A stretch of DNA of 63,888 bases, filler included, from Octopus bimaculoides (GCF_001194135.2; 9 parts of 8 records of this genome joined end to end with filler, not necessarily neighbours in it); one strand, 5' to 3'. Counted from the whole stretch's first letter, positions 23-11,463 are shown. The notes: generated by a model from the letters alone, not told the origin. Numbers and translations: made by a program.

Positions 23-143
23 AGGCGTAGGAGTGGTTGTGTGGTAAGAAGCTTGCTTACCAACCACATGGTTGTGGGTTCAGTCCCACTGCATAGCACC
101 TTGGTCAAGTGTCTTGTACTATGGCCTCGGGCCGACCAAAGCC
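23..143 (+). mobile_element. SINE family A, 5' fragment (tRNA-like head plus CORE-like block)
   Basis: GGCGTAGGAGTGGTTGTGTGGTAAG...GGGTTCAGTCCCACTG...CCTTGGTCAAGTGTCTT; the same sequence recurs many times in the window (16.8, 18.6, 19.6, 20.0, 23.5, 46.8, 52.4 kb). Confidence 0.85.
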
Positions 144-1652
144 TCATTTCAGTTCAGTAAACTGGGACAACGGGAATTGAATCACCTCACTCAGGGACAC
201 ATACTCCATTCGGTCCGGGGCCCAGAATTTACGACTTTACGATCTTGAGACCAGCGTCCTAAGGTCTAGACGGAGCAGCTTCAGATTATTATCTGATGAG
301 ATGTTAAGAAAGGCTGAAACTCGCTCTCTGGATATAAGTTTAGGGCCACCAGTGGGGTGGGTGGGGGAACTCATAGTTTAAACACGATGTATGCATACTT
401 TCCACGGCAAGGATGTGGAAAATGTGTTTACTAAAAACAAGCACGTGCTGGTACGTTTAAATTTACATTTCTACATGCATATACAGACATACTTACATTC
501 ATACATGCATACATATATACATATTTGCATACTCACACTCACACACACACACACATGTGTAGAGTATATATGCATATATATATATATATGCATATATATA
601 TATATATATATATANNNNNNNNNNNNNNNNNNNNNNNNNNNNNNNNNNNNNNNNNNNNNNNNNNNNNNNNNNNNNNNNNNNNNNNNNNNNNNNNNNNNNN
701 NNNNNNNNNNNNNNNNNNNNNNNNNNNNNNNNNNNNNNNNNNNNNNNNNNNNNNNNNNNNNNNNNNNNNNNNNNNNNNNNNNNNNNNNNNNNNNNNNNNN
801 NNNNNNNNNNNNNNNNNNNNNNNNNNNNNNNNNNNNNNNNNNNNNNNNNNNNNNNNNNNNNNNNNNNNNNNNNNNNNNNNNNNNNNNNNNNNNNNNNNNN
901 NNNNNNNNNNNNNNNNNNNNNNNNNNNNNNNNNNNNNNNNNNNNNNNNNNNNNNNNNNNNNNNNNNNNNNNNNNNNNNNNNNNNNNNNNNNNNNNNNNNN
1001 NNNNNNNNNNNNNNNNNNNNNNNNNNNNNNNNNNNNNNNNNNNNNNNNNNNNNNNNNNNNNNNNNNNNNNNNNNNNNNNNNNNNNNNNNNNNNNNNNNNN
1101 NNNNNNNNNNNNNNNNNNNNNNNNNNNNNNNNNNNNNNNNNNNNNNNNNNNNNNNNNNNNNNNNNNNNNNNNNNNNNNNNNNNNNNNNNNNNNNNNNNNN
1201 NNNNNNNNNNNNNNNNNNNNNNNNNNNNNNNNNNNNNNNNNNNNNNNNNNNNNNNNNNNNNNNNNNNNNNNNNNNNNNNNNNNNNNNNNNNNNNNNNNNN
1301 NNNNNNNNNNNNNNNNNNNNNNNNNNNNNNNNNNNNNNNNNNNNNNNNNNNNNNNNNNNNNNNNNNNNNNNNNNNNNNNNNNNNNNNNNNNNNNNNNNNN
1401 NNNNNNNNNNNNNNNNNNNNNNNNNNNNNNNNNNNNNNNNNNNNNNNNNNNNNNNNNNNNNNNNNNNNNNNNNNAACAAAAATCCATCTTTCCATTTTAA
1501 TGTGGTATTCCTTACCTCCTTCCCTCTCCCCCTCTCTCTCCTTCTCTCTCTTTCTCTCCTAAGACCCCCTACCCCCTTCCTTCTACAACAACTTCCTCCC
1601 ACATAGCTAGCTTCTTTAGCCATCCATCCGTCCATGTTTTTTTTTTCCTCTG

Positions 1653-1726
1653 CGTCAATCACTACTACTACTTCAACATGTTGAATGAGGTGCGTTGGAA
1701 TCCAGAACTGGTGTCGCTTCCGAGGC
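1653..1726 (+). repeat. Unclassified ~60-bp module, copy A
   Basis: CGTCAATC...TTCAACATGTTG...GTGCGTTGGAATCCAGAACTGGTGTCGCTTCCGAGGC; 35/37 identical to copy B over the core. Confidence 0.85.
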
Positions 1727-1971
1727 ATCCCTCCCTCCCTCCATGTAACCACGCACAGGCACATGCACTCACGCATCATATATGCGCGCACACGCATCAT
1801 ATATATATATATATATATGCACACGTACATACACACGCGCATCATATACCCACACACACATACACACGTTTGCGTAACGTGAACATAAATGTCTAGAATT
1901 CTCCTCATACATATATATGATTAGCTGTTTAATGCATGTATAATGTGTGTGTGTGTGTGTGTGTGTGTGTA

Positions 1972-2051
<80 letters not shown>

Positions 2052-2513
2052 CTAATATATCTGTGTGTAAGTACGTATGTATGGATGATGGATATATAAA
2101 TATATCTATGCATGCGTGTAGGTATGTATATGTATGTATGCATGTATATGTATGTGTGCATGTATGTATATGTATGCATGTATATATATATATATATATA
2201 TANNNNNNNNNNNNNNNNNNNNNNNNNNNNNNNNNNNNNNNNNNNNNNNNNNNNNNNNNNNNNNNNNNNNNNNNNNNNNNNNNNNNNNNNNNNNNNNNNN
2301 NNNNNNNNNNNNNNNNNNNNNNNNNNNNNNNNNNNNNNNNNNNNNNNNNNNNNNNNNNNNNNNNNNNNNNNNNNNNNNNNNNNNNNNNNNNNNNNNNNNN
2401 NNNNNNNNNNNNNNNNNNNNNNNNNNNNNNNNNNNNNNNNNNNNNNNNNNNNNNNNNNNNNNNNNNNNNNNNNNNNNNNNTATATGTATGTATGTATGTA
2501 TGTGTACATACAT

Positions 2514-2544
<31 letters not shown>

Positions 2545-2560
2545 CACATATATATATATA

Positions 2561-3200
2561 CTAGCAGAAATACCCGGCATTGCCCGGGTTAAAGAGAATA
2601 ATGAAATTTCAAAACGCCGTCTAGATTACGCAGGTCTCAGCTGCTAGTATCCGAGATACCGGCGTTCTACATTAATAACTCTGCAACCCATGCCAGCATA
2701 GGACACAGGCGTTAAGTGAAATGTTAAAGGAAAGTTTTCAACTCATATATGTATATAAAGTAAATACACGTAATTCAAAAACACGTTTTGTGTAGCTTAT
2801 TTCGTAACCAAAAAAAGAGGTACAGATTATAAACAATGAAAGGCCGATTTTGGTGATTCATTTGACAGAGGTAGTTGAGACGATAAATCTGACCTTGGAC
2901 CTTGAAAGTTTGCATGAATTCTGGCTCAGTGAAACTTCTTCGAGCTCCAAATGATGCCAATGGTATCTGTTGTTAGAGACTGTCGTCTAATGTTTAAGAT
3001 TGTCCTTAAAGCAAGTTTGTTGGAATCTTTCTAAAGCCTTGATGTGACGACGATATGTAGTCCAAGTATAAAACGGGTATAAAAGGTAAGTTGAGACGCA
3101 CGATCCACAGACGTTGAGCTTGGTTTTGAAGCTGGTACCTCGGTCAAACAACACACGATTTTCAAGCCTTACAAAGGATCTTACGACGCCATCTTCAGAT
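2561..3200 (-). mobile_element. Internally deleted Helitron: N-terminal Rep-region fragment joined to a 3' terminus
   Basis: Minus-strand ASFGARRSFTEPEFMQTFKVQGQIY (2775-2960) matches the Helitron_like_N motif MTSFGA...FMPTFKVQGQ(I/V)YH. The 3' end is a GC hairpin ACCCGG-CATTGC-CCGGGT (2572-2589) followed by CTAG (2561-2564) and a T flank on the minus strand. Confidence 0.8.
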
Positions 3201-3254
3201 TTATTTCAGCAAAAGAAAATAGAGGAGGATTAGTTAAATACGATTTTAGTTAAA

Positions 3255-3411
3255 TGCGATTTTATTCAACATCTTCCCCTCTCAAATTCACACACTTATT
3301 GCAGCAGTCCTTCAGATTTTCTAAGCCCTATAAAAGAACTTGCCAGGTTGGGCCCCCAACTATGTCTTTTGCGATATCCTTAAAGCCAGGGACTTTTCAA
3401 CAACCCATCGT
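3255..3411 (-). mobile_element. Mariner-type DNA transposon remnant (TIR-like end plus transposase C-terminus)
   Basis: Minus strand GLENLKDCCNKCVNLRGEDVE* resembles the mariner C-terminus GIxKLxxRWxKCxxxxGxYVE*. A TIR-like CGATGGGTTGTTGAAAAGTCCCTGGC lies at 3384-3411; no matching second TIR was seen. Confidence 0.6.
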
Positions 3412-4396
3412 GTGTGTGCGTTTATATATANNNNNNNNNNNNNNNNNNNNNNNNNNNNNNNNNNNNNNNNNNNNNNNNNNNNNNNNNNNNNNNNNNNNNN
3501 NNNNNNNNNNNNNNNNNNNNNNNNNNNNNNNNNNNNNNNNNNNNNNNNNNNNNNNNNNNNCCTAGTGGTCTTCTTTATATATACATATACAATAATCCCT
3601 TGAGATCTCATATATTTTTTCTGAATCTCTCTGATTCTTTTAATGTGCTTGCTTCCTGGTAATAAATCGATATTAATTAATATATAATCTTTTACCCTAA
3701 TGTTTTAATTTTATATATATATACATATATGGGTACAGGACGACAGCAGCAGTAAAACAACATGAAATACAAAAACAAATGAGCTAAAAATGCAAATAAC
3801 GAGAGAGAAAAAGGACAAGTAATACTATATCTCTCTCTCTCTATATATATATATATATTTATATATATGTGTTAATAAAAATATACATATACTCATATTT
3901 GGGGTTCTATTTTTTCTGTTTGCATACATACATACATACATACATACATACATACACACATATATACGTGCGTTTGTGTGTGTAAATACGTCGTAGTTTC
4001 TACACACACACACACACACACACACACTTTTATAAAGACAAACTAACTCCCAATGAAATTCCTTTCCCATTACTCTCGAGATCCGACGCCATGACACAAC
4101 AGGTTCTGTCATGAATGATGTCGAAAAATGTAGGATGTGCAGGCGGGGTGGGTGGAGGTGCGATGCACAAGATTAAAAGAGAAAAATAAATAAATCATAA
4201 ACTCCGTCATTCATTGTCGCGCTATCATTACGTCGTCTGCCATTTTTCCTCTGTCTGCTCTCACCTCTTGTCTCCGCCGTCACCGCCATCACGGAACCTC
4301 CATTACCTCTACTTAACACCTTCCCCCTTCTCACCATTCCTTCACTTCATGCTTCATTCATTCTTTCCATATTATTCATTTATATCGTCATCTTTT

Positions 4397-4460
4397 CCTT
4401 CGTCAATCTTCTTCAACACGTTGGTGCGATGGAATCTAGAACTGGTGTCGCTTCCGAGGC
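4397..4460 (+). repeat. Unclassified ~60-bp module, copy B
   Basis: CCTTCGTCAATC-TTC-TTCAACACGTTGGTGCGATGGAATCTAGAACTGGTGTCGCTTCCGAGGC. Confidence 0.85.
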
Positions 4461-4698
4461 GTCATTCCTATCATCTCTACAAAAGTATACGCGTGCGCGC
4501 GCGCACACACACACTCACTCACACACGTACACACACACATTCACACTCACAAACACACATGCTTAGGTACACAGACACATATATACGCACACACAAACAT
4601 TTTACACACGTAATTAGACATGCACACGCACGTTCACATACACACACACACACATATATATACATATATGTATATACACACACACATATATATGTATA

Positions 4699-4742
<44 letters not shown>

Positions 4743-5493
4743 TATATTTATTTATTTATNNNNNNNNNNNNNNNNNNNNNNNNNNNNNNNNNNNNNNNNN
4801 NNNNNNNNNNNNNNNNNNNNNNNNNNNNNNNNNNNNNNNNNNNNNNNNNNNNNNNNNNNNNNNNNNNNNNNNNNNNNNNNNNNNNNNNNNNNNNNNNNNN
4901 NNNNNNNNNNNNNNNNNNNNNNNNNNNNNNNNNNNNNNNNNNNNNNNNNNNNNNNNNNNNNNNNNNNNNNNNNNNNNNNNNNNNNNNNNNNNNNNNNNNN
5001 NNNNNNNNNNNNNNNNNNNNNNNNNNNNNNNNNNNNNNNNNNNNNNNNNNNNNNNNNNNNNNNNNNNNNNNNNNNNNNNNNNNNNNNNNNNNNNNNNNNN
5101 NNNNNNNNNNNNNNNNNNNNNNNNNNNNNNNNNNNNNNNNNNNNNNNNNNNNNNNNNNNNNNNNNNNNNNNNNNNNNNNNNNNNNNNNNNNNNNNNNNNN
5201 NNNNNNNNNNNNNNNNNNNNNNNNNNNNNNNNNNNNNNNNNNNNNNNNNNNNNNNNNNNNNNNNNNNNNNNNNNNNNNNNNNNNNNNNNNNNNNNNNNNN
5301 NNNNNNNNNNNNNNNNNNNNNNTGTCTAGAGCAGAAAATTTTATTATTTTATGTTTGACTTTTGTTTTGCATTTGTACAAGTTGGATCCAAGTCTCACCC
5401 AGAGACCTCAAGAGACAACAAGTTAGAAGTTCATGTAGGATGTGTGCGGTGCCTAGTAGGGCTACTTTCTGTATATTATTAAATTGTTATTTA

Positions 5494-5700
5494 AGGCGGC
5501 GATGTGGCTGAATCATTAAAACCCCAGGCAAAATGCTATGCGGTATTTCATCCGTCTTTACTATCTGAGTTCAAATTCTGCTTAGGTCGACTTTGCCTTT
5601 CATCCTTTTGGGATCGATAAATTAAGTACCAGTGAAACACTGGGTCGTCTAGTCCCTTCCCTCCAAATTTCAGGCCCTGTGCCTTTAGTAGAAAGGATTA
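5494..5700 (+). mobile_element. SINE family B (~210 bp, ATT-repeat tail)
   Basis: AAGGCGGCGATGTGGCTGAATC...TGAGTTCAAATTC...GGTCGACTTTGCCTTTCATCC...GTAGAAAGGATTATT; more than 12 related copies in the window. Confidence 0.85.
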
Positions 5701-5739
5701 TTATAATAATTGTTATTATTATCATTCAGGCATACCTTG

Positions 5740-6190
5740 ATCCAAAAGTGTTATCTTCTTGCTCCAAATATAATTAGACATTCAGAGTAAACATTTGTGT
5801 GCTGGAGGTCTGCTGTACTCCACCTCCGAATGTAGCAGTCGAGGAGGTGGTGAAGCAGCTCTGTAAGTGTTTCGACCCCTTCCATCATGACACCAGAACT
5901 GCTTGGGGTCATCCACCGATATAGGCAACAAAACATCTACACAACAGCACGAGGTTTGTTAAGTTAGATGTTGTGACTTTGGGCCGGATGTTTCGACCAT
6001 CTTCAACGCTCATTCTTGATGCATCGCTCGGCTTCTCTTGAGCCAAATGTAATGGCTTCTCTTTCTCAGCGACCTCCGTCTGTTTTCTGGCAATACCTTT
6101 TTGTATCCTTCGTAGCTAGTCCAGGATCCTTGAGCATCGAATGAACCCTGTTTACAACAAATCCTCAAGCACTTATCTCCAAAGCTTTCA
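5740..6190 (-). mobile_element. Probable Penelope-like element 3' fragment with degenerate hammerhead-like cores
   Basis: Minus strand REAITFGSREAERCIKNE weakly resembles the PLE GIY-YIG tail (KEAIxI...INxD). It is followed by TTGAAGATGGTCGAAACATC and GATGACCCC...GGGGTCGAAAC motifs typical of PLE pseudo-LTRs. Confidence 0.45.
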
Positions 6191-6219
6191 ACAAATACAG
6201 AGGGGAGAGAAATCAAACG

Positions 6220-6272
<53 letters not shown>

Positions 6273-6599
6273 AGGACGACGGCATCTGTAAGAAAGAGGG
6301 AGGGGAGAGCTTAAGGAAAATAAAATAAAACTTAAACATGTATACAATTTTGTTTAAATCTTCCAATGTAAATTGTAACTCGTTCAACGCCACATATATC
6401 CCCGTGGATCATCGCAAAATTCACGCAACTTCCATATGTACCACCGTTGGTACATTTTCATCATTTTAGAAAATATTTTATTCTGTATTTTTGATATGGG
6501 TTTGAGGATATTTAAATAACATGAGCGCTAAATATTAAATTTTAATTATGAAATATTGTAGGAATGCAAAAACAATTACATTCCCTTGTGATTAGATAG

Positions 6600-6897
6600 T
6601 ATGTAGTGTGGCCGCTCGAAACACGTGGCGCCAGCAAAGGGTTCCTTTAACAGGTAGTGGTGGTTAACGTGTTAAGAGAATGTTTAAAGTACATGTGATG
6701 GGGGTCACTGATCTGTGAAGTTATGCGTGAAAATTCACTAATTAAAGGTGTTTTAAAAGTACATACACACCAAAGGTATATCACATTTTCTAGTAAATTA
6801 AATACAATTATATGGTGACTGAACACACTGAAAAGCAGGTACATTTTAATAGAAAGGATGTTATGTATATATATATGTACTATTCGTGTACATAGTA

Positions 6898-6950
<53 letters not shown>

Positions 6951-7070
6951 ACCAATCTAGCTTCGCTTGTCTACTAAGATGGCCGCTGCTTTGCTCAAGT
7001 GAATACTTCACCGAATTGAAGTCTTTTAACACGAGTTGGCTGTCTTGCGAAACATTATATTTGGTATGTA
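6600..7070 (+). promoter_or_regulatory. Putative promoter-like patch
   Basis: Local CpG enrichment, E-box CACGTG (6622-6627), CCAATC (6952-6957) and YY1-like AAGATGGCCGC (6976-6986). A possible donor TG|GTATGT at 7063/7064 also coincides with the start of a (TATG)n tract. Confidence 0.3.
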
Positions 7071-7682
7071 TGTATGTGTGTATGTATGTATGCATGTATG
7101 CATGTATGTATGTATGTATGTATATTCGGAGCTGTTTGTATGTAAGTTTGTGAGTATGTATATTCGGATATGTTTGTATGTGAGTGTGTGAGACTGTATA
7201 TGCGTGTATGTATGTGTGTATGCCTACGTATATATATATGTGTGTGTGTGTGCACATGTGCGCGCATGCTTGTATTCTGACGATCGATAAAATTGAAATA
7301 GAGGAAAAGACACCAACAGACAAGAGAGGCAGACAAAAAAAATGAGAGAGAGAGAGAGAGAGACAAGTATAGAAAGCAGAGAATAACATTACGTATTTAG
7401 TTTGACATACATATAATATAGTCAGAGATCAAGTGAGAGAGTGAGACAGCGGGAGAGAAATCAAGCGAGAGAGAGAGAAAGAGAGAGACGGTAAGAGAGG
7501 GAGAGAGAGAGACGGAGAGCGAGAGAGAAAGAGAGATAGAGAGAAGACGACGACGTCTGTAAGAGAGGAAGAGGGAGTGGGAGGGAGAGCTTAAGGAAAA
7601 TAAAATATTACAGAAAGAAAGAGTAGGAGAAAGAATCAAAGGTGGAGAAAGGCTAAAGATGTAAGAGAGTAGGAGAGAGAGA

Positions 7683-7753
<71 letters not shown>

Positions 7754-7890
7754 ATGTAGTATGAATGAGATGTGGAAAGTTCCTCCAGATTTTTCTTTAT
7801 ATTTTTTAATTGTTTATATCTTTTCTTTTCCCCCCGCCACTTATTTTATTTTTTTTTTTCTTCATTTATTTATTCCCGTAGTATTTGGTT

Positions 7891-7949
7891 TGGAAGCGAC
7901 ACCAGTTCTGGATTCCATCGTAACAACGTGTTGAATTGATTGACGAAGG
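7891..7949 (-). repeat. Unclassified ~60-bp module, copy C (inverted)
   Basis: Reverse complement CCTTCGTCAATC-AA-TTCAACACGTTGTTACGATGGAATCCAGAACTGGTGTCGCTTCCA; 28/29 identical to copies A and B over the core. Confidence 0.85.
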
Positions 7950-8277
7950 GATGGATGGATGATGGATGATTGGTGTTTATATATATATATATATGGATGG
8001 GTAAAGGTAGATGAATGGTAGAACGGGTGGGTGGTGGTTGGTTAGGTGTATGTGTGTTTGTGCCGGGAAGGAGAGAAATGGTGAGTGGGTATTTTCGATT
8101 GAGGGCTACCGTAGCTATGATGAAAGGGGATAGAATTTTTTCTATCTTTTCCGTCACAAACCACCGACAATCATCACCAATCAACATGTTCTATGTAGTG
8201 TCACCATTGAGCACAAACACTCACTATATGTATATAGAAAAACGAGGTGTGTGTGTGTGTGTGTAAATATATATATA

Positions 8278-8327
<50 letters not shown>

Positions 8328-9254
8328 NNNNNNNNNNNNNNNNNNNNNNNNNNNNNNNNNNNNNNNNNNNNNNNNNNNNNNNNNNNNNNNNNNNNNNNNN
8401 NNNNNNNNNNNNNNNNNNNNNNNNNNNNNNNNNNNNNNNNNNNNNNNNNNNNNNNNNNNNNNNNNNNNNNNNNNNNNNNNNNNNNNNNNNNNNNNNNNNN
8501 NNNNNNNNNNNNNNNNNNNNNNNNNNNNNNNNNNNNNNNNNNNNNNNNNNNNNNNNNNNNNNNNNNNNNNNNNNNNNNNNNNNNNNNNNNNNNNNNNNNN
8601 NNNNNNNNNNNNNNNNNNNNNNNNNNNNNNNNNNNNNNNNNNNNNNNNNNNNNNNNNNNNNNNNNNNNNNNNNNNNNNNNNNNNNNNNNNNNNNNNNNNN
8701 NNNNNNNNNNNNNNNNNNNNNNNNNNNNNNNNNNNNNNNNNNNNNNNNNNNNNNNNNNNNNNNNNNNNNNNNNNNNNNNNNNNNNNNNNNNNNNNNNNNN
8801 NNNNNNNNNNNNNNNNNNNNNNNNNNNNNNNNNNNNNNNNNNNNNNNNNNNNNNNNNNNNNNNNNNNNNNNNNNNNNNNNNNNNNNNNNNNNNNNNNNNN
8901 NNNNNNNNNNNNNNNNNNNNNNNNNNNNNNNNNNNNNNNNNNNNNNNNNNNNNNNNNNNNNNNNNNNNNNNNNNNNNNNNNNNNNNNNNNNNNNNNNNNN
9001 NNNNNNNNNNNNNNNNNNNNNNNNNNNNNNNNNNNNNNNNNNNNNNNNNNNNNNNNNNNNNNNNNNNNNNNNNNNNNNNNNNNNNNNNNNNNNNNNNNNN
9101 NNNNNNNNNNNNNNNNNNNNNNNNNNNNNNNNNNNNNNNNNNNNNNNNNNNNNNNNNNNNNNNNNNNNNNNNNNNNNNNNNNNNNNNNNNNNNNNNNNNN
9201 NNNNNNNNNNNNNNNNNNNNNNNNNNNNNNNNNNNNNNNNNNNNNNNNNNNNNA

Positions 9255-9420
9255 TATATATAAGACGAGCTTCTTTCAGTTTCCGTCTACCCCAATTTCA
9301 CTCACAAGACTTTGGTCAGCCCAGAGCTACGTAGTAGAGGACACTCGACCAAGGTGCTACAAAATGGGACTGAACGTGGAACCATGTTGTCGGGAAGCAA
9401 ACTTGTCATCACACAGGCAC
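9255..9420 (-). mobile_element. SINE family A fragment
   Basis: GACGAGCTTCTTTCAGTTTCCGTCTAC...GGGACTGAACGTGGAACCATG matches the reverse complement of other family A copies. Confidence 0.8.
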
Positions 9421-9879
9421 ACCGGCATGCATGTGTGTGTACGTGCGTATGTATGTACGTAGGTAAAATATGTAGATATATGGAGGTAGATGCGTGTCGT
9501 TAGACGACGAAGATTTAGTTGCATGCTCAGCTGAATTACCTGCCCCTGAGTTAACGCAGCATTGACTTAAATGCTCAGGTGGGATCAATGTGATAGAGTT
9601 GTTGTAGTGAAAATGGTACACCCGTTTCGACGCGACAAAGTTGTATGACACGGCCACTATGAAGTCAGACGGTCAGTCGTTGTAGGAGGTCAGTAGTAGT
9701 AGGGCCGTTGTACGAGTTCTCATTTGGAGTCAATGTCAGTTACGTGATATATACGAGTTCGTGAAAGTAGACATTTCAAAGTCATTGTCTTGCGGAGTTG
9801 TCAACTATAGCACGATGGACGAGTCAAAGATAATAAGACGCGGAATACCGTCACAACATAATAATGGCGACAAGAATAT

Positions 9880-10092
9880 TCTTTTCTTCTCTAGGTACAA
9901 GGCCCTAAATTTTTGGGGAGGGGGCCAGTCGATTACATTGACCCAGTATGCAACTGGTACTTAATTTATCGACCTCGAAAGGATGAAAGGCAAAATCGAC
10001 CTCGCGGAATTTGGACTCAGTACGTAAGGGCAGACGAAATACCGCTAAGCATTTCGTCCGGCGTGCTAACGTTTCTGCCAGCTCGACGCCTT
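9880..10092 (-). mobile_element. SINE family B
   Basis: Reverse complement of the family B consensus, ending CTGCCAGCTCGACGCCTT. Confidence 0.85.
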
Positions 10093-10624
10093 GGCGACAA
10101 AAATATTACAGTGCCGACAATAACATACAAGTGGACGAGGATCCACGTTATAACTAGAGTGTGTACCAAGGCAGTCTGCATTTGTCGGGCATCTGTACAG
10201 TTTCCGCTCACAAGCCGTGTAAAGGCGATCCGAAGCCATGGAAAACGACATTTTCCGAAGGTGACTCAGAGTGGAATCAAGTTCGGAACTCATATCTGTT
10301 AAACGAACTTCTTAACTAGTCGACTGCACTGCGTTTATACACACGCACACACACACACGCACGCATGCACACACACACACACTCACACACACACGCACAC
10401 ACGCATACACACATATACACACACGCACGCACAAAAGCACACATACAAATCCTAGTTTCCAGTGTATAAAGCACAATGAAATATTTTAAGTTTGAATAAA
10501 AAATTTTATTTGCAGGTTTGTAATTTCTCATATTCAAAAGAGAAATTCGAAAACATATATATATATTCGAACACAAATATAGAAGTTATAGATTGTGCTT
10601 TGTCCAAAATACATCCAAATGACT

Positions 10625-10780
10625 TTAGAGCACCGGATATTTCGAACTTGTATCATTGCACCAACATTGAGTCTTCAGGTTCCTGAGATGGATAATTGAG
10701 GCTCTTTCTTTCAGTTTGAGGATTTGAGTTGGCATATCAGGAGGATGCAGGCCATTGAGGAATTTCACTGTGTTTTTCGA
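10625..10780 (-). pseudogene. Helitron PIF1-type helicase fragment
   Basis: Minus strand TVKFLNGLHPPDMPTQILKLKERASIIHLRNLKTQCWCNDT matches the Helitron helicase motif PxEFLNSLxPxGMPPHxLxLKxGxxIMLLRNL...GLCNGT; upstream sequence is frameshifted. Not shown in the ORF track. Confidence 0.75.
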
Positions 10781-11463
10781 GTTCTTTTACATCTAAATTT
10801 GCATCCATGGGTTTATTTTGGCAGTTGTCTCTCAATCCGAGAAAGACGTTTCTGCAATTTCTTACTGAACAACCTGTACAGATGATTTGTTTATAGTGAT
10901 CAAATGTTTCAGCTACACATAAGCTCATTCCCTCCGTCAAATCGATATTGTTTGTACTGGCGCACGATGTGATACGCGTCACATGTCGAAGTGGTCGTAG
11001 TGCATTATGAAATGGAGTGTTTTATTCAAGAACATAACACACAACATGTTCCGGGCAAATAACTCGTGACTTCACGATCGTGACTGCGACCATGCTGTAG
11101 CATATTTGTTATATATGCACACACACACACAGACAGACAGAGGCAGAGACAGAGGTACAATATGAATAACTGAACCGCCAGTTACGTCTCTCAGCCTTTT
11201 CCCCCTCTTTTCCGCAAGAGAAGACAAACGCACCAAACATTGTACATCCTAAATTCGTGCGCTTCGCACATACATGTACATGTCATACACACATATACAC
11301 GTCACACACACACACACCTACCCACCTATCAATTTAGATGCTTGCTTACCAGCTGCGCCGGCCGACCTGTTTATCGATTTTTAGTCAACTGTTTACCACT
11401 CACTCACTACACATGCGCACACACACACACAGACACATGCACGCACGCACACACGGGTGCGTG

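What the first reader, a model, noticed from the sequence alone, without database searches (positions are those of the whole stretch)
1653..7949. Unexplained ~60-bp module present three times (two direct, one inverted) in rapidly evolving microsatellite DNA
Seen: CCTTCGTCAATC-[variable]-TTCAACAYGTTG-[variable]-GYGCGWTGGAATCYAGAACTGGTGTCGCTTCC at 1653-1726 (+), 4397-4460 (+) and 7891-7949 (-). The 29-bp core differs by one base between C and either A or B, while the flanks share only pyrimidine-rich composition. The module strings together three short dyads (TTCAACATGTTGAA, TGGA-A-TCCA, CCAG-AA-CTGG) and tolerates indels only between blocks. It matches none of the other repeats in the window and does not recur after 8 kb. 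Copies B and C face each other across the promoter-like patch at 6.6-7.1 kb. Inference: a locally multiplied regulatory or boundary element, a small RNA unit, or the conserved core of an old repeat.
Basis: partly seen in the sequence, partly recalled or inferred. Interest (0 to 1): 0.7.

Follow-up and report, generated by a model that had tools for sequence, protein, structure and literature searches.

The report
Short dispersed repeat, likely retroposon fragment
The ~60-base module is real and repeated, but it looks like copies of a small mobile-element fragment in microsatellite-rich, transposon-rich animal DNA rather than a regulatory switch or RNA gene; this is ordinary, and the source genome was not available to confirm it.

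Summary
The three copies exist where stated. The 26-nt core TGGAATCCAGAACTGGTGTCGCTTCC has 0, 1 and 0 mismatches, with none expected in 200 shuffles. Three details of the finding need correction:
- A profile of the copies finds a fourth, degenerate partial copy at 12763-12808. No score that high occurred in 400 shuffled windows.
- Copy B keeps only one of the three dyads.

The flanks are not homologous beyond composition, so the unit is sharp-edged, about 60-100 nt, and differs by 6-8% between copies. That rules out a segmental duplication. Read on the opposite strand, copy A ends in A10 and is bracketed by a perfect 7-nt direct repeat. Copy B shows a weaker version of this and copy C none.

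There is no stable or shared RNA fold, no Rfam match, no Pol III B box, no protein match and no CpG or GC signature for the "promoter patch".

Best reading (about 0.55): an interspersed repeat family, probably 5'-truncated retroposon tails. Genome-wide copy number could not be tested because no cephalopod DNA is reachable with these tools. A, B and C lie on three separate contigs, so their spacing and relative orientation depend on scaffolding. Interest is low.

The parts
1650..1729 (+). It carries an (ACT)n-like 8-nt insert and a 6-nt insert relative to B and C. The putative whole insertion is 1638-1739.
   Evidence: nhmmer 67.0 bits, E 1.2e-20; core exact
4398..4463 (+). Copy B of the module. 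It has one C>T change in the core, which destroys two of the three dyads. The putative whole insertion is 4394-4470.
   Evidence: nhmmer 77.2 bits; core with 1 mismatch; dyads
7884..7948 (-). Copy C of the module. Similarity to A and B stops at GCTTCC. On the + strand it is followed at 7950-7973 by (GATG)n.
   Evidence: nhmmer 70.7 bits; core exact; sequence
12763..12808 (-). Copy D: a degenerate partial fourth copy. GGAATGTAGAATTGGTGTCGCTGC matches GGAATCCAGAACTGGTGTCGCTTC at 20 of 24 positions.
   Evidence: nhmmer 14.0 bits, E 3.9e-4; 0 of 400 block-shuffled windows reach 14, maximum 9.7
1637..1646 (.). T10 run next to copy A. It reads as an A10 tail if the element is read on the - strand.
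   Evidence: One of only two A/T homopolymers of 10 nt or more in 10.6 kb of resolved sequence
1631..1637 (.). Left copy of the direct repeat TCCATGT bracketing copy A. Extended form: CCGTCCATGT at 1628-1637.
   Evidence: TCCATGT occurs only twice in the window. P 0.005 with the boundary fixed at the T run, 0.32 with a floating boundary.
1740..1746 (.). Right copy of the direct repeat TCCATGT. Extended form: CCCTCCATGT at 1737-1746, matching the left copy at 9 of 10 positions.
4388..4393 (.). Left copy of a possible direct repeat TCATCT bracketing copy B. It is followed by TTT.
   Evidence: Weak: P 0.04 with a fixed boundary, 0.37 floating.
4471..4476 (.). Right copy of the possible direct repeat TCATCT.

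Best explanation
The module is a copy of a short interspersed repeat family, not a locally evolved functional element. The copies most likely arrived by separate insertions. The most likely mechanism is LINE-mediated retroposition (target-primed reverse transcription) of a short RNA 3' end, either a heavily 5'-truncated LINE or SINE tail or a very small non-autonomous retroposon.

On this reading the copies do nothing. The high core identity reflects youth (2-6% from the consensus), not selection. The sharp edges are insertion junctions. The microsatellite flanks reflect a window that is at least 25% simple repeats.

Shown: four copies, sharp edges, flanks that are not homologous, and no RNA or protein signal. 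Inferred: insertion as the origin, the orientation, the retroposition mechanism, and a high genome-wide copy number.
For: 1. Flanks are not homologous while the module is 92-94% identical. At that divergence co-duplicated flanks would still align, so the copies were not made by segmental duplication.
2. A fourth, more decayed copy lies 4.8 kb away from copy C, also on the - strand. This points to a family whose members differ in age.
3. Copy A on the - strand shows element, then A10, then ACATGGA, with the same 7-mer just upstream of the element. The extended repeat matches at 9 of 10 positions, the 7-mer is found nowhere else in the window, and P is 0.005 with the boundary fixed at the A run.
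4. Copy B has AGATGA on both sides, after AAA.
5. Copy C stops being similar about 8-15 nt earlier at the presumed 5' end, as variable 5' truncation would produce.
6. By my count 2 of about 6 substitutions are CpG transitions (ACG>ATG, GCG>GCA), which fits neutral decay.
7. The context is rich in transposons: two SINE-like families, a decayed Pif1/Helitron-type helicase, and about 25% tandem repeats. One of the SINE copies in the window ends directly in (TA)n (about 9254-9290). Octopus genomes are reported as about 66% repeats, with SINEs 11.6% and LINEs 12.9% (PMC13282606).
8. No alternative function has support: no stable fold, no Rfam match, no protein match.
Against: - Genome-wide copy number is unknown, because no collection reachable here holds this genome.
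- Four copies in 10.6 kb of resolved sequence need either a very abundant family (order 1e5-1e6 copies in a genome of a few Gb) or local clustering.
- The direct-repeat evidence is post hoc and lies in low-complexity (CCNT)n sequence. With floating boundaries the chance probability is 0.32 for A and 0.37 for B.
- Copy C has no A tail and no clean target-site duplication.
- The longest T run near C (7849-7859) lies at the opposite end of the module from the one near A.
- A and B appear to start at nearly the same 5' position, which random 5' truncation does not predict.
- There is no Pol III B box and no tRNA, 5S or 7SL relationship, so it is not a canonical SINE.
- No partner LINE was found.
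Confidence: 0.55

Rival explanations
1. Local templated insertions. Replication template switching (MMBIR/FoSTeS type) in unstable microsatellite DNA copied a nearby 60-100 nt stretch several times, in either orientation, into sites a few kb apart.
For: The copies cluster within a few kb, lie in both orientations, and have sharp edges with unrelated flanks. The region is full of microsatellites and assembly gaps. Short repeats at the junctions could be microhomologies rather than target-site duplications.
Against: The A10 run abutting a 7-nt repeat at copy A is what retroposition predicts and is not expected from template switching. Copy D lies 4.8 kb further on and is much more diverged. No source copy with extended homology can be identified.
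Confidence: 0.12
2. Another kind of transposon fragment, either a MITE or B and C acting as terminal inverted repeats of a ~3.5 kb non-autonomous DNA transposon spanning 4397-7949.
For: B and C are inverted with their CCTTCG ends pointing outward. A decayed Helitron-type helicase shows that DNA transposons are present in the window.
Against: There is no target-site duplication outside 4397 and 7949 (TCTTTT versus GATGGA). The module has no internal terminal inverted repeat. No transposase ORF or Pfam hit lies between B and C. The inverted arrangement crosses an unresolved gap. Copies A and D are solo.
Confidence: 0.08
3. A cis-regulatory or boundary module, such as a clustered binding platform for a sequence-specific DNA-binding protein, kept by purifying selection while everything around it turned over.
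For: The 26-nt core is identical in A and C and has one change in B. The flanks are unrelated. Short dyads are marginally enriched in A and C.
Against: B loses two dyads with no compensating change. Core conservation is not significantly greater than in the rest of the module. The putative target-site duplication and A tail at copy A would not survive in ancient duplicates. There is no promoter-like composition between B and C. Copy D is freely decayed.
Confidence: 0.08
4. A small RNA gene or retro-pseudogene of one (miRNA, snoRNA, or a piRNA-producing unit).
For: A perfectly conserved 26-nt stretch is about the size of a mature small RNA.
Against: Fold energies are worse than shuffles on both strands (z +0.4 to +1.9) and the three copies share no structure. 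Rfam finds nothing at the module even when only 121-151 nt are searched at E up to 10. All Rfam hits across the window are sub-threshold matches in microsatellites.
Confidence: 0.04
5. An assembly artefact, in which one locus or its haplotypes was assembled three times into separate short contigs of a gappy scaffold.
For: Each copy is on its own contig, bounded by N runs that abut microsatellites.
Against: Redundant contigs would share their flanks at high identity, and they do not. The copies also differ by indels and substitutions.
Confidence: 0.03

Closest known systems
5'-truncated LINE or SINE retroposon insertions made by target-primed reverse transcription (general knowledge of non-LTR retrotransposons)
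   Same: - Short, sharp-edged copies in both orientations
- Unrelated flanks
- A few percent divergence between copies
- An A run plus a flanking direct repeat at copy A
- A slightly different 5' end in copy C
   Different: - No partner LINE or longer consensus is known.
- There is no Pol III promoter box.
- Copy C lacks both a tail and a target-site duplication.
- Copy number is untested.
- A and B share nearly the same 5' end.
Microsatellite-associated interspersed repeats, for example Drosophila mini-me elements, lepidopteran microsatellite-flanking repeat families, and bivalve Helitron-linked pearl/CvA repeats (recalled from memory as a lead, not tested)
   Same: A conserved complex core of tens of bases sits between microsatellites and recurs at several loci.
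   Different: The microsatellites here are not shown to belong to the element. Their types differ between copies, and a quarter of the whole window is simple repeat anyway.
Cephalopod CORE/Ceph-domain SINEs (Akasaki 2010, as discussed in PMC5786205)
   Same: They share the genome context. The window carries SINE-like repeats containing the CCTTGG motif (24-180, 9275-9423, 13293-13343).
   Different: The module profile matches none of those SINE copies. It contains neither CCTTGGGAAAG nor the 23-nt RTE-like string quoted in that paper.
MITEs and the terminal inverted repeats of DNA transposons
   Same: Small size, and an inverted B/C pair.
   Different: There is no terminal inverted repeat within the unit, no target-site duplication outside the B/C pair, and no transposase between them.
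Clustered short conserved promoter or insulator motifs, for example the vertebrate protocadherin conserved sequence element with CTCF sites (recalled from memory as a lead only)
   Same: A motif of 20-30 nt is repeated within a few kb.
   Different: No associated genes, exons or promoter signature are present. Binding is untested.

Membership tests
LINE-mediated retroposon copy (SINE or 5'-truncated LINE tail) | Multiple copies with unrelated flanks | tested here: met
   There are four copies. The flanks align no better than shuffled or reversed controls.
LINE-mediated retroposon copy (SINE or 5'-truncated LINE tail) | Target-site duplication flanking each copy | tested here: inconclusive
   A: perfect 7-nt repeat (9 of 10 when extended), P 0.005 with a fixed boundary but 0.32 floating. 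B: 6-nt repeat, P 0.04 fixed and 0.37 floating. C: none of 6 nt or more.
LINE-mediated retroposon copy (SINE or 5'-truncated LINE tail) | 3' poly(A) or simple-repeat tail | tested here: inconclusive
   On the - strand reading, A has A10, B has AAA(A), and C has (GATG)n with no A run.
LINE-mediated retroposon copy (SINE or 5'-truncated LINE tail) | Dispersed, high copy number across the genome | not testable with these tools
   No cephalopod DNA is in the searchable collections. The protein-handle searches, including a SINE-ORF control, came back empty.
Canonical SINE | Internal Pol III promoter, or a head derived from tRNA, 5S or 7SL | tested here: not met
   No tRNA, no Rfam match, and no B box within one mismatch in the module.
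Canonical SINE | 3' tail shared with a partner LINE | not testable with these tools
   No LINE library is available. The module's 12- to 15-mers are absent from the supplements of the octopus LINE paper.
MITE / TIR DNA transposon | Terminal inverted repeats with a flanking target-site duplication | tested here: not met
   The ends of the unit are not inverted repeats of each other. The sequence outside the B/C pair is TCTTTT on one side and GATGGA on the other.
Segmental or tandem duplication | Homology continues into the flanks at a divergence similar to the repeat | tested here: not met
   The long self-BLAST alignments are compositional extensions of the module match.
Structured small RNA gene | A stable, conserved secondary structure or a match to a known family | tested here: not met
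   All z-scores are positive and the three copies fold differently. Rfam finds nothing.
Protein-coding exon | A homologous protein or domain, and splice sites | tested here: not met
   One frame (FNTL.RWNPELVSLP) is open in all three copies. It has no hit in the word-index search, in 1.84 billion representatives or in Pfam. The spacer between the first two blocks varies by 2, 3 or 11 nt, which is out of frame.
cis-regulatory or insulator element | Protein binding, open chromatin, and conservation at the orthologous position | not testable with these tools
   No chromatin data and no orthologous sequence are available.

The most novel reading that the evidence does not exclude
The module is a functional ~60-bp DNA element, for example a binding platform for an architectural or zinc-finger protein. 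It would have been multiplied locally and held nearly invariant by selection while the surrounding microsatellite DNA turned over completely. That would make it a lineage-specific boundary or regulatory motif.
Probability: 0.07. Interest if true: 0.6.

Novelty: new member of a known kind. Interest (0 to 1): 0.15.

Why it matters
If the main reading holds, the finding has only annotation value. It adds one more short interspersed repeat to mask in a repeat-rich genome, and it gives an example of how a young insertion can look like a conserved element when the surrounding DNA is microsatellite.

It would matter more only if a genome-wide search showed the module to be confined to this locus or conserved at orthologous positions. 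In that case it would be a candidate lineage-specific regulatory or boundary motif, or a case of local templated insertion.

Tried and rejected
- **DNA scans for the 25-nt core.** JGI metagenome contigs, GTDB genome contigs and IMG/VR gave 0 hits. A relaxed 22-nt pattern gave one metagenome hit (L001) whose flanks are unrelated, so it is a chance match.
- **Protein handle.** One frame is open through all three copies. A profile of it found nothing in the 5.8-billion-cluster word index or in 1.84 billion representatives.
- **Control for that negative.** A SINE-derived ORF from the window and a Helitron-like ORF also found nothing. These collections therefore do not cover this genome's non-coding DNA, and the negatives say nothing about copy number.
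- **Literature.** Full-text search for module 16-mers and SINE 13- to 17-mers gave 0 papers. The supplements of the octopus LINE paper contain no module k-mers. The O. vulgaris repeat paper has no library held as text, and the mollusc SINE paper has no supplements held.
- **Longer repeat unit.** Self-BLAST suggested 138-581 nt alignments around the copies. Testing the flanks alone showed these are compositional, so the idea of a longer repeat was rejected.
- **Other origins considered.** tRNA, 5S, snoRNA, a primer-binding site and a Pol III B box were considered by eye. None is supported by ARAGORN, Rfam or the B-box scan.
- **Weak Pfam hits.** zf-BED and Atrophin hits among the 125 ORFs (E about 0.009) are at the level expected by chance and were not pursued.


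Full report
**What the window is.** The 13.7-kb piece is AT-rich (40% GC) animal-type DNA broken by six N runs: 615-1474, 2203-2480, 3431-3560, 4760-5322, 8328-9253 and 11991-12294. Each gap abuts a microsatellite. About 25% of the 10,640 resolved bases are tandem repeats by TRF. It also holds two SINE-like repeat families. One is 24-180, matching the reverse complement of 9275-9423 and of 13293-13343. The other is 5493-5719, matching the reverse complement of 9858-10092. A decayed Pif1/Helitron-type helicase fragment is also present. No ORF of 40 aa or more has a credible Pfam domain other than that fragment. ARAGORN finds no tRNA. I could not confirm the species.

**Gaps first.** Copies A, B and C sit on three different contigs: 1475-2202, 3561-4759 and 5323-8327. 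Their spacing and relative orientation therefore rest on scaffolding.
- Gap 2203-2480 has the same-strand (TATG)n motif on both edges, which is consistent with one array in the given orientation.
- The other two gaps inside the finding give no such evidence.
- Nothing here is coding, so frame continuity does not arise.
- The three contigs are not redundant assemblies of one locus, because their flanks differ.

**The observation.** The 26-nt core TGGAATCCAGAACTGGTGTCGCTTCC is at 1696-1721 (+), 4430-4455 (+, one C>T) and 7892-7917 (-). Zero matches are expected in 200 shuffles. The whole module aligns as GTCAATC, a spacer of 11, 3 or 2 nt, TTCAACAYGTTG, a 6-nt insert in A only, six more bases, then the core. 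A and B continue with GAGGCRTC. Over 51 aligned columns the copies differ at 3-4 positions (6-8%).

- A starts CTGCG rather than CCTTCG.
- The dyads TGGA-a-TCCA and CCAG-aa-CTGG are present only in A and C. B's single substitution removes both without compensation, and the enrichment is marginal.
- 'Indels only between blocks' rests on two indel sites in three sequences.
- The core is not significantly better conserved than the rest of the module by my count (1 change in 26 columns against 5 in 25).

**A fourth copy.** An nhmmer profile of the three copies finds a degenerate partial copy at 12763-12808 on the - strand, scoring 14.0 bits with E 3.9e-4. None of 400 windows shuffled in 200-nt blocks reaches that score; the maximum was 9.7. 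The module therefore does recur after 8 kb, in a more decayed state.

**Edges and flanks.** Self-BLAST reported longer alignments around the copies, for example 4199-4759 against 1479-2016 at 61% and 7892-8027 against 4455-4324 at 72%. I then aligned the flanks alone, using 175 nt upstream and 150 nt downstream. The scores fell inside the range of dinucleotide shuffles and were matched or beaten by reversed-sequence controls. This has a consequence: at 6-8% divergence, co-duplicated flanks would still be about 92% identical. The copies were therefore not made by segmental duplication. Either the unit was inserted separately at each site, or it is very old and strongly constrained.

**Insertion hallmarks on the other strand**.
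- Copy A, read on the - strand, is tggtt ACATGGA [gggagggagggatgcctc GGAAGC...GATTGAC gcagagg A10] ACATGGA cggatgg.
- The 7-mer occurs nowhere else in the window and extends to a 9-of-10 match.
- The A10 run (T10 at 1637-1646) is one of only two A/T homopolymers of 10 nt or more in the window.
- With the boundary fixed at the A run, the chance of the repeat is 0.005. If the boundary may float within the low-complexity (CCNT)n flank it is 0.32. I therefore treat this as suggestive, not proof.
- Copy B has AGATGA on both sides, after AAA (0.04 fixed, 0.37 floating).
- Copy C has no clean duplication and is followed by (GATG)n. Its similarity to A and B ends 8-15 nt earlier at the presumed 5' end, as variable 5' truncation would give.
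- The other long T run (7849-7859) lies near C but at the opposite end of the module, which does not fit the model and is probably unrelated.

**Tests of the other readings.**
- *RNA:* all six folds (three copies, both strands) are less stable than their shuffles, with z from +0.4 to +1.9, and they share no structure.
- *Rfam:* there is nothing at the module, even when only 121-151 nt are searched at E up to 10. The window-wide hits are sub-threshold pseudo-miRNA matches in microsatellites.
- *Coding:* one frame (FNTL.RWNPELVSLP) is open in all three copies. It has no relative in the word-index search, in 1.84 billion representatives or in Pfam. The first spacer varies out of frame.
- *Pol III SINE head:* no B box lies within one mismatch.
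- *DNA transposon:* the unit has no terminal inverted repeats. There is no target-site duplication outside the inverted B/C pair and no transposase between them.
- *Promoter patch:* 6.5-7.1 kb has GC 0.35-0.36 and CpG o/e 0.4-1.3 against a window mean of 0.83.

**What could not be done.** The decisive test is the module's copy number and distribution in the source genome, and it is out of reach.
- The DNA collections hold no match. The single relaxed-pattern hit is a chance match.
- The protein collections do not cover this genome's non-coding DNA. A SINE-derived control ORF and a Helitron-like ORF from the window also found nothing.
- Text searches of papers and supplements for module k-mers were empty.

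**Verdict.** The best-supported reading, at about 0.55, is a short interspersed repeat family. The copies would be young (2-6% from their consensus; octopus TE bursts are reported at Jukes-Cantor 0.09 and 0.2). They would have no function of their own.

The main weakness is density. Four copies in 10.6 kb require either a very abundant family or local clustering. The latter keeps two rivals alive: local templated insertion (0.12) and a selected regulatory or boundary motif (0.08). Other transposon types (0.08), a small RNA (0.04) and an assembly artefact (0.03) are less likely. Overall the finding is real but most probably ordinary.

Noticed in passing
window 10628-10786 (- strand); wider 10450-11100: A 53-aa ORF matches Pfam PF21530, the Pif1 helicase 2B domain (E 2.6e-5, 24.3 bits against a cutoff of 23.9). 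Neighbouring frames read like a frameshifted, stop-ridden helicase C-terminus (...FLNGLHPPDMPTQILKLKERASIIHLRNL...). This is a decayed Helitron or Pif1-like fragment.
   Followed up: partly
window 24-180 (+), 9275-9423 (-), 13293-13343 (-): Three copies (72-78% identical) of a SINE-like repeat containing a CCTTGG motif like the CORE/Ceph domain. The copy at 9254-9423 ends directly in (TA)n next to a gap, which suggests TE tails seed some of the microsatellites and assembly gaps.
   Followed up: partly
window 5493-5719 and 9858-10092 (inverted): A second SINE-like repeat pair, 72% identical over 236 nt. ARAGORN and Rfam find no tRNA-like head.
   Followed up: no
window 6220-6336 and 7494-7616 (direct): An 81%-identical direct repeat made of a GA-rich tract plus GACGACGNCNTCTGTAAGA...GAGAGCTTAAGGAAAATAAAAT. 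It is another unclassified repeat lying between copies B and C.
   Followed up: no
   Followed up: yes
window 1637-1646 and 7849-7859: The only two A/T homopolymers of 10 nt or more in the window both lie within about 35 nt of a module copy, but at opposite ends of the module. The first fits a retroposon tail. The second is unexplained.
   Followed up: partly
window 1594-1788 (+), 4337-4510 (+), 7873-7977 (-): One reading frame (FNTL.RWNPELVSLP) stays open through all three copies, and the 6-nt insert in A is in frame. No protein relative exists in any library searched, so it is probably chance.
   Followed up: yes
all six N runs: Every assembly gap is bordered by a microsatellite, so gap lengths and the order and orientation of the short contigs (728 nt and 1199 nt for copies A and B) are uncertain.
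   Followed up: partly
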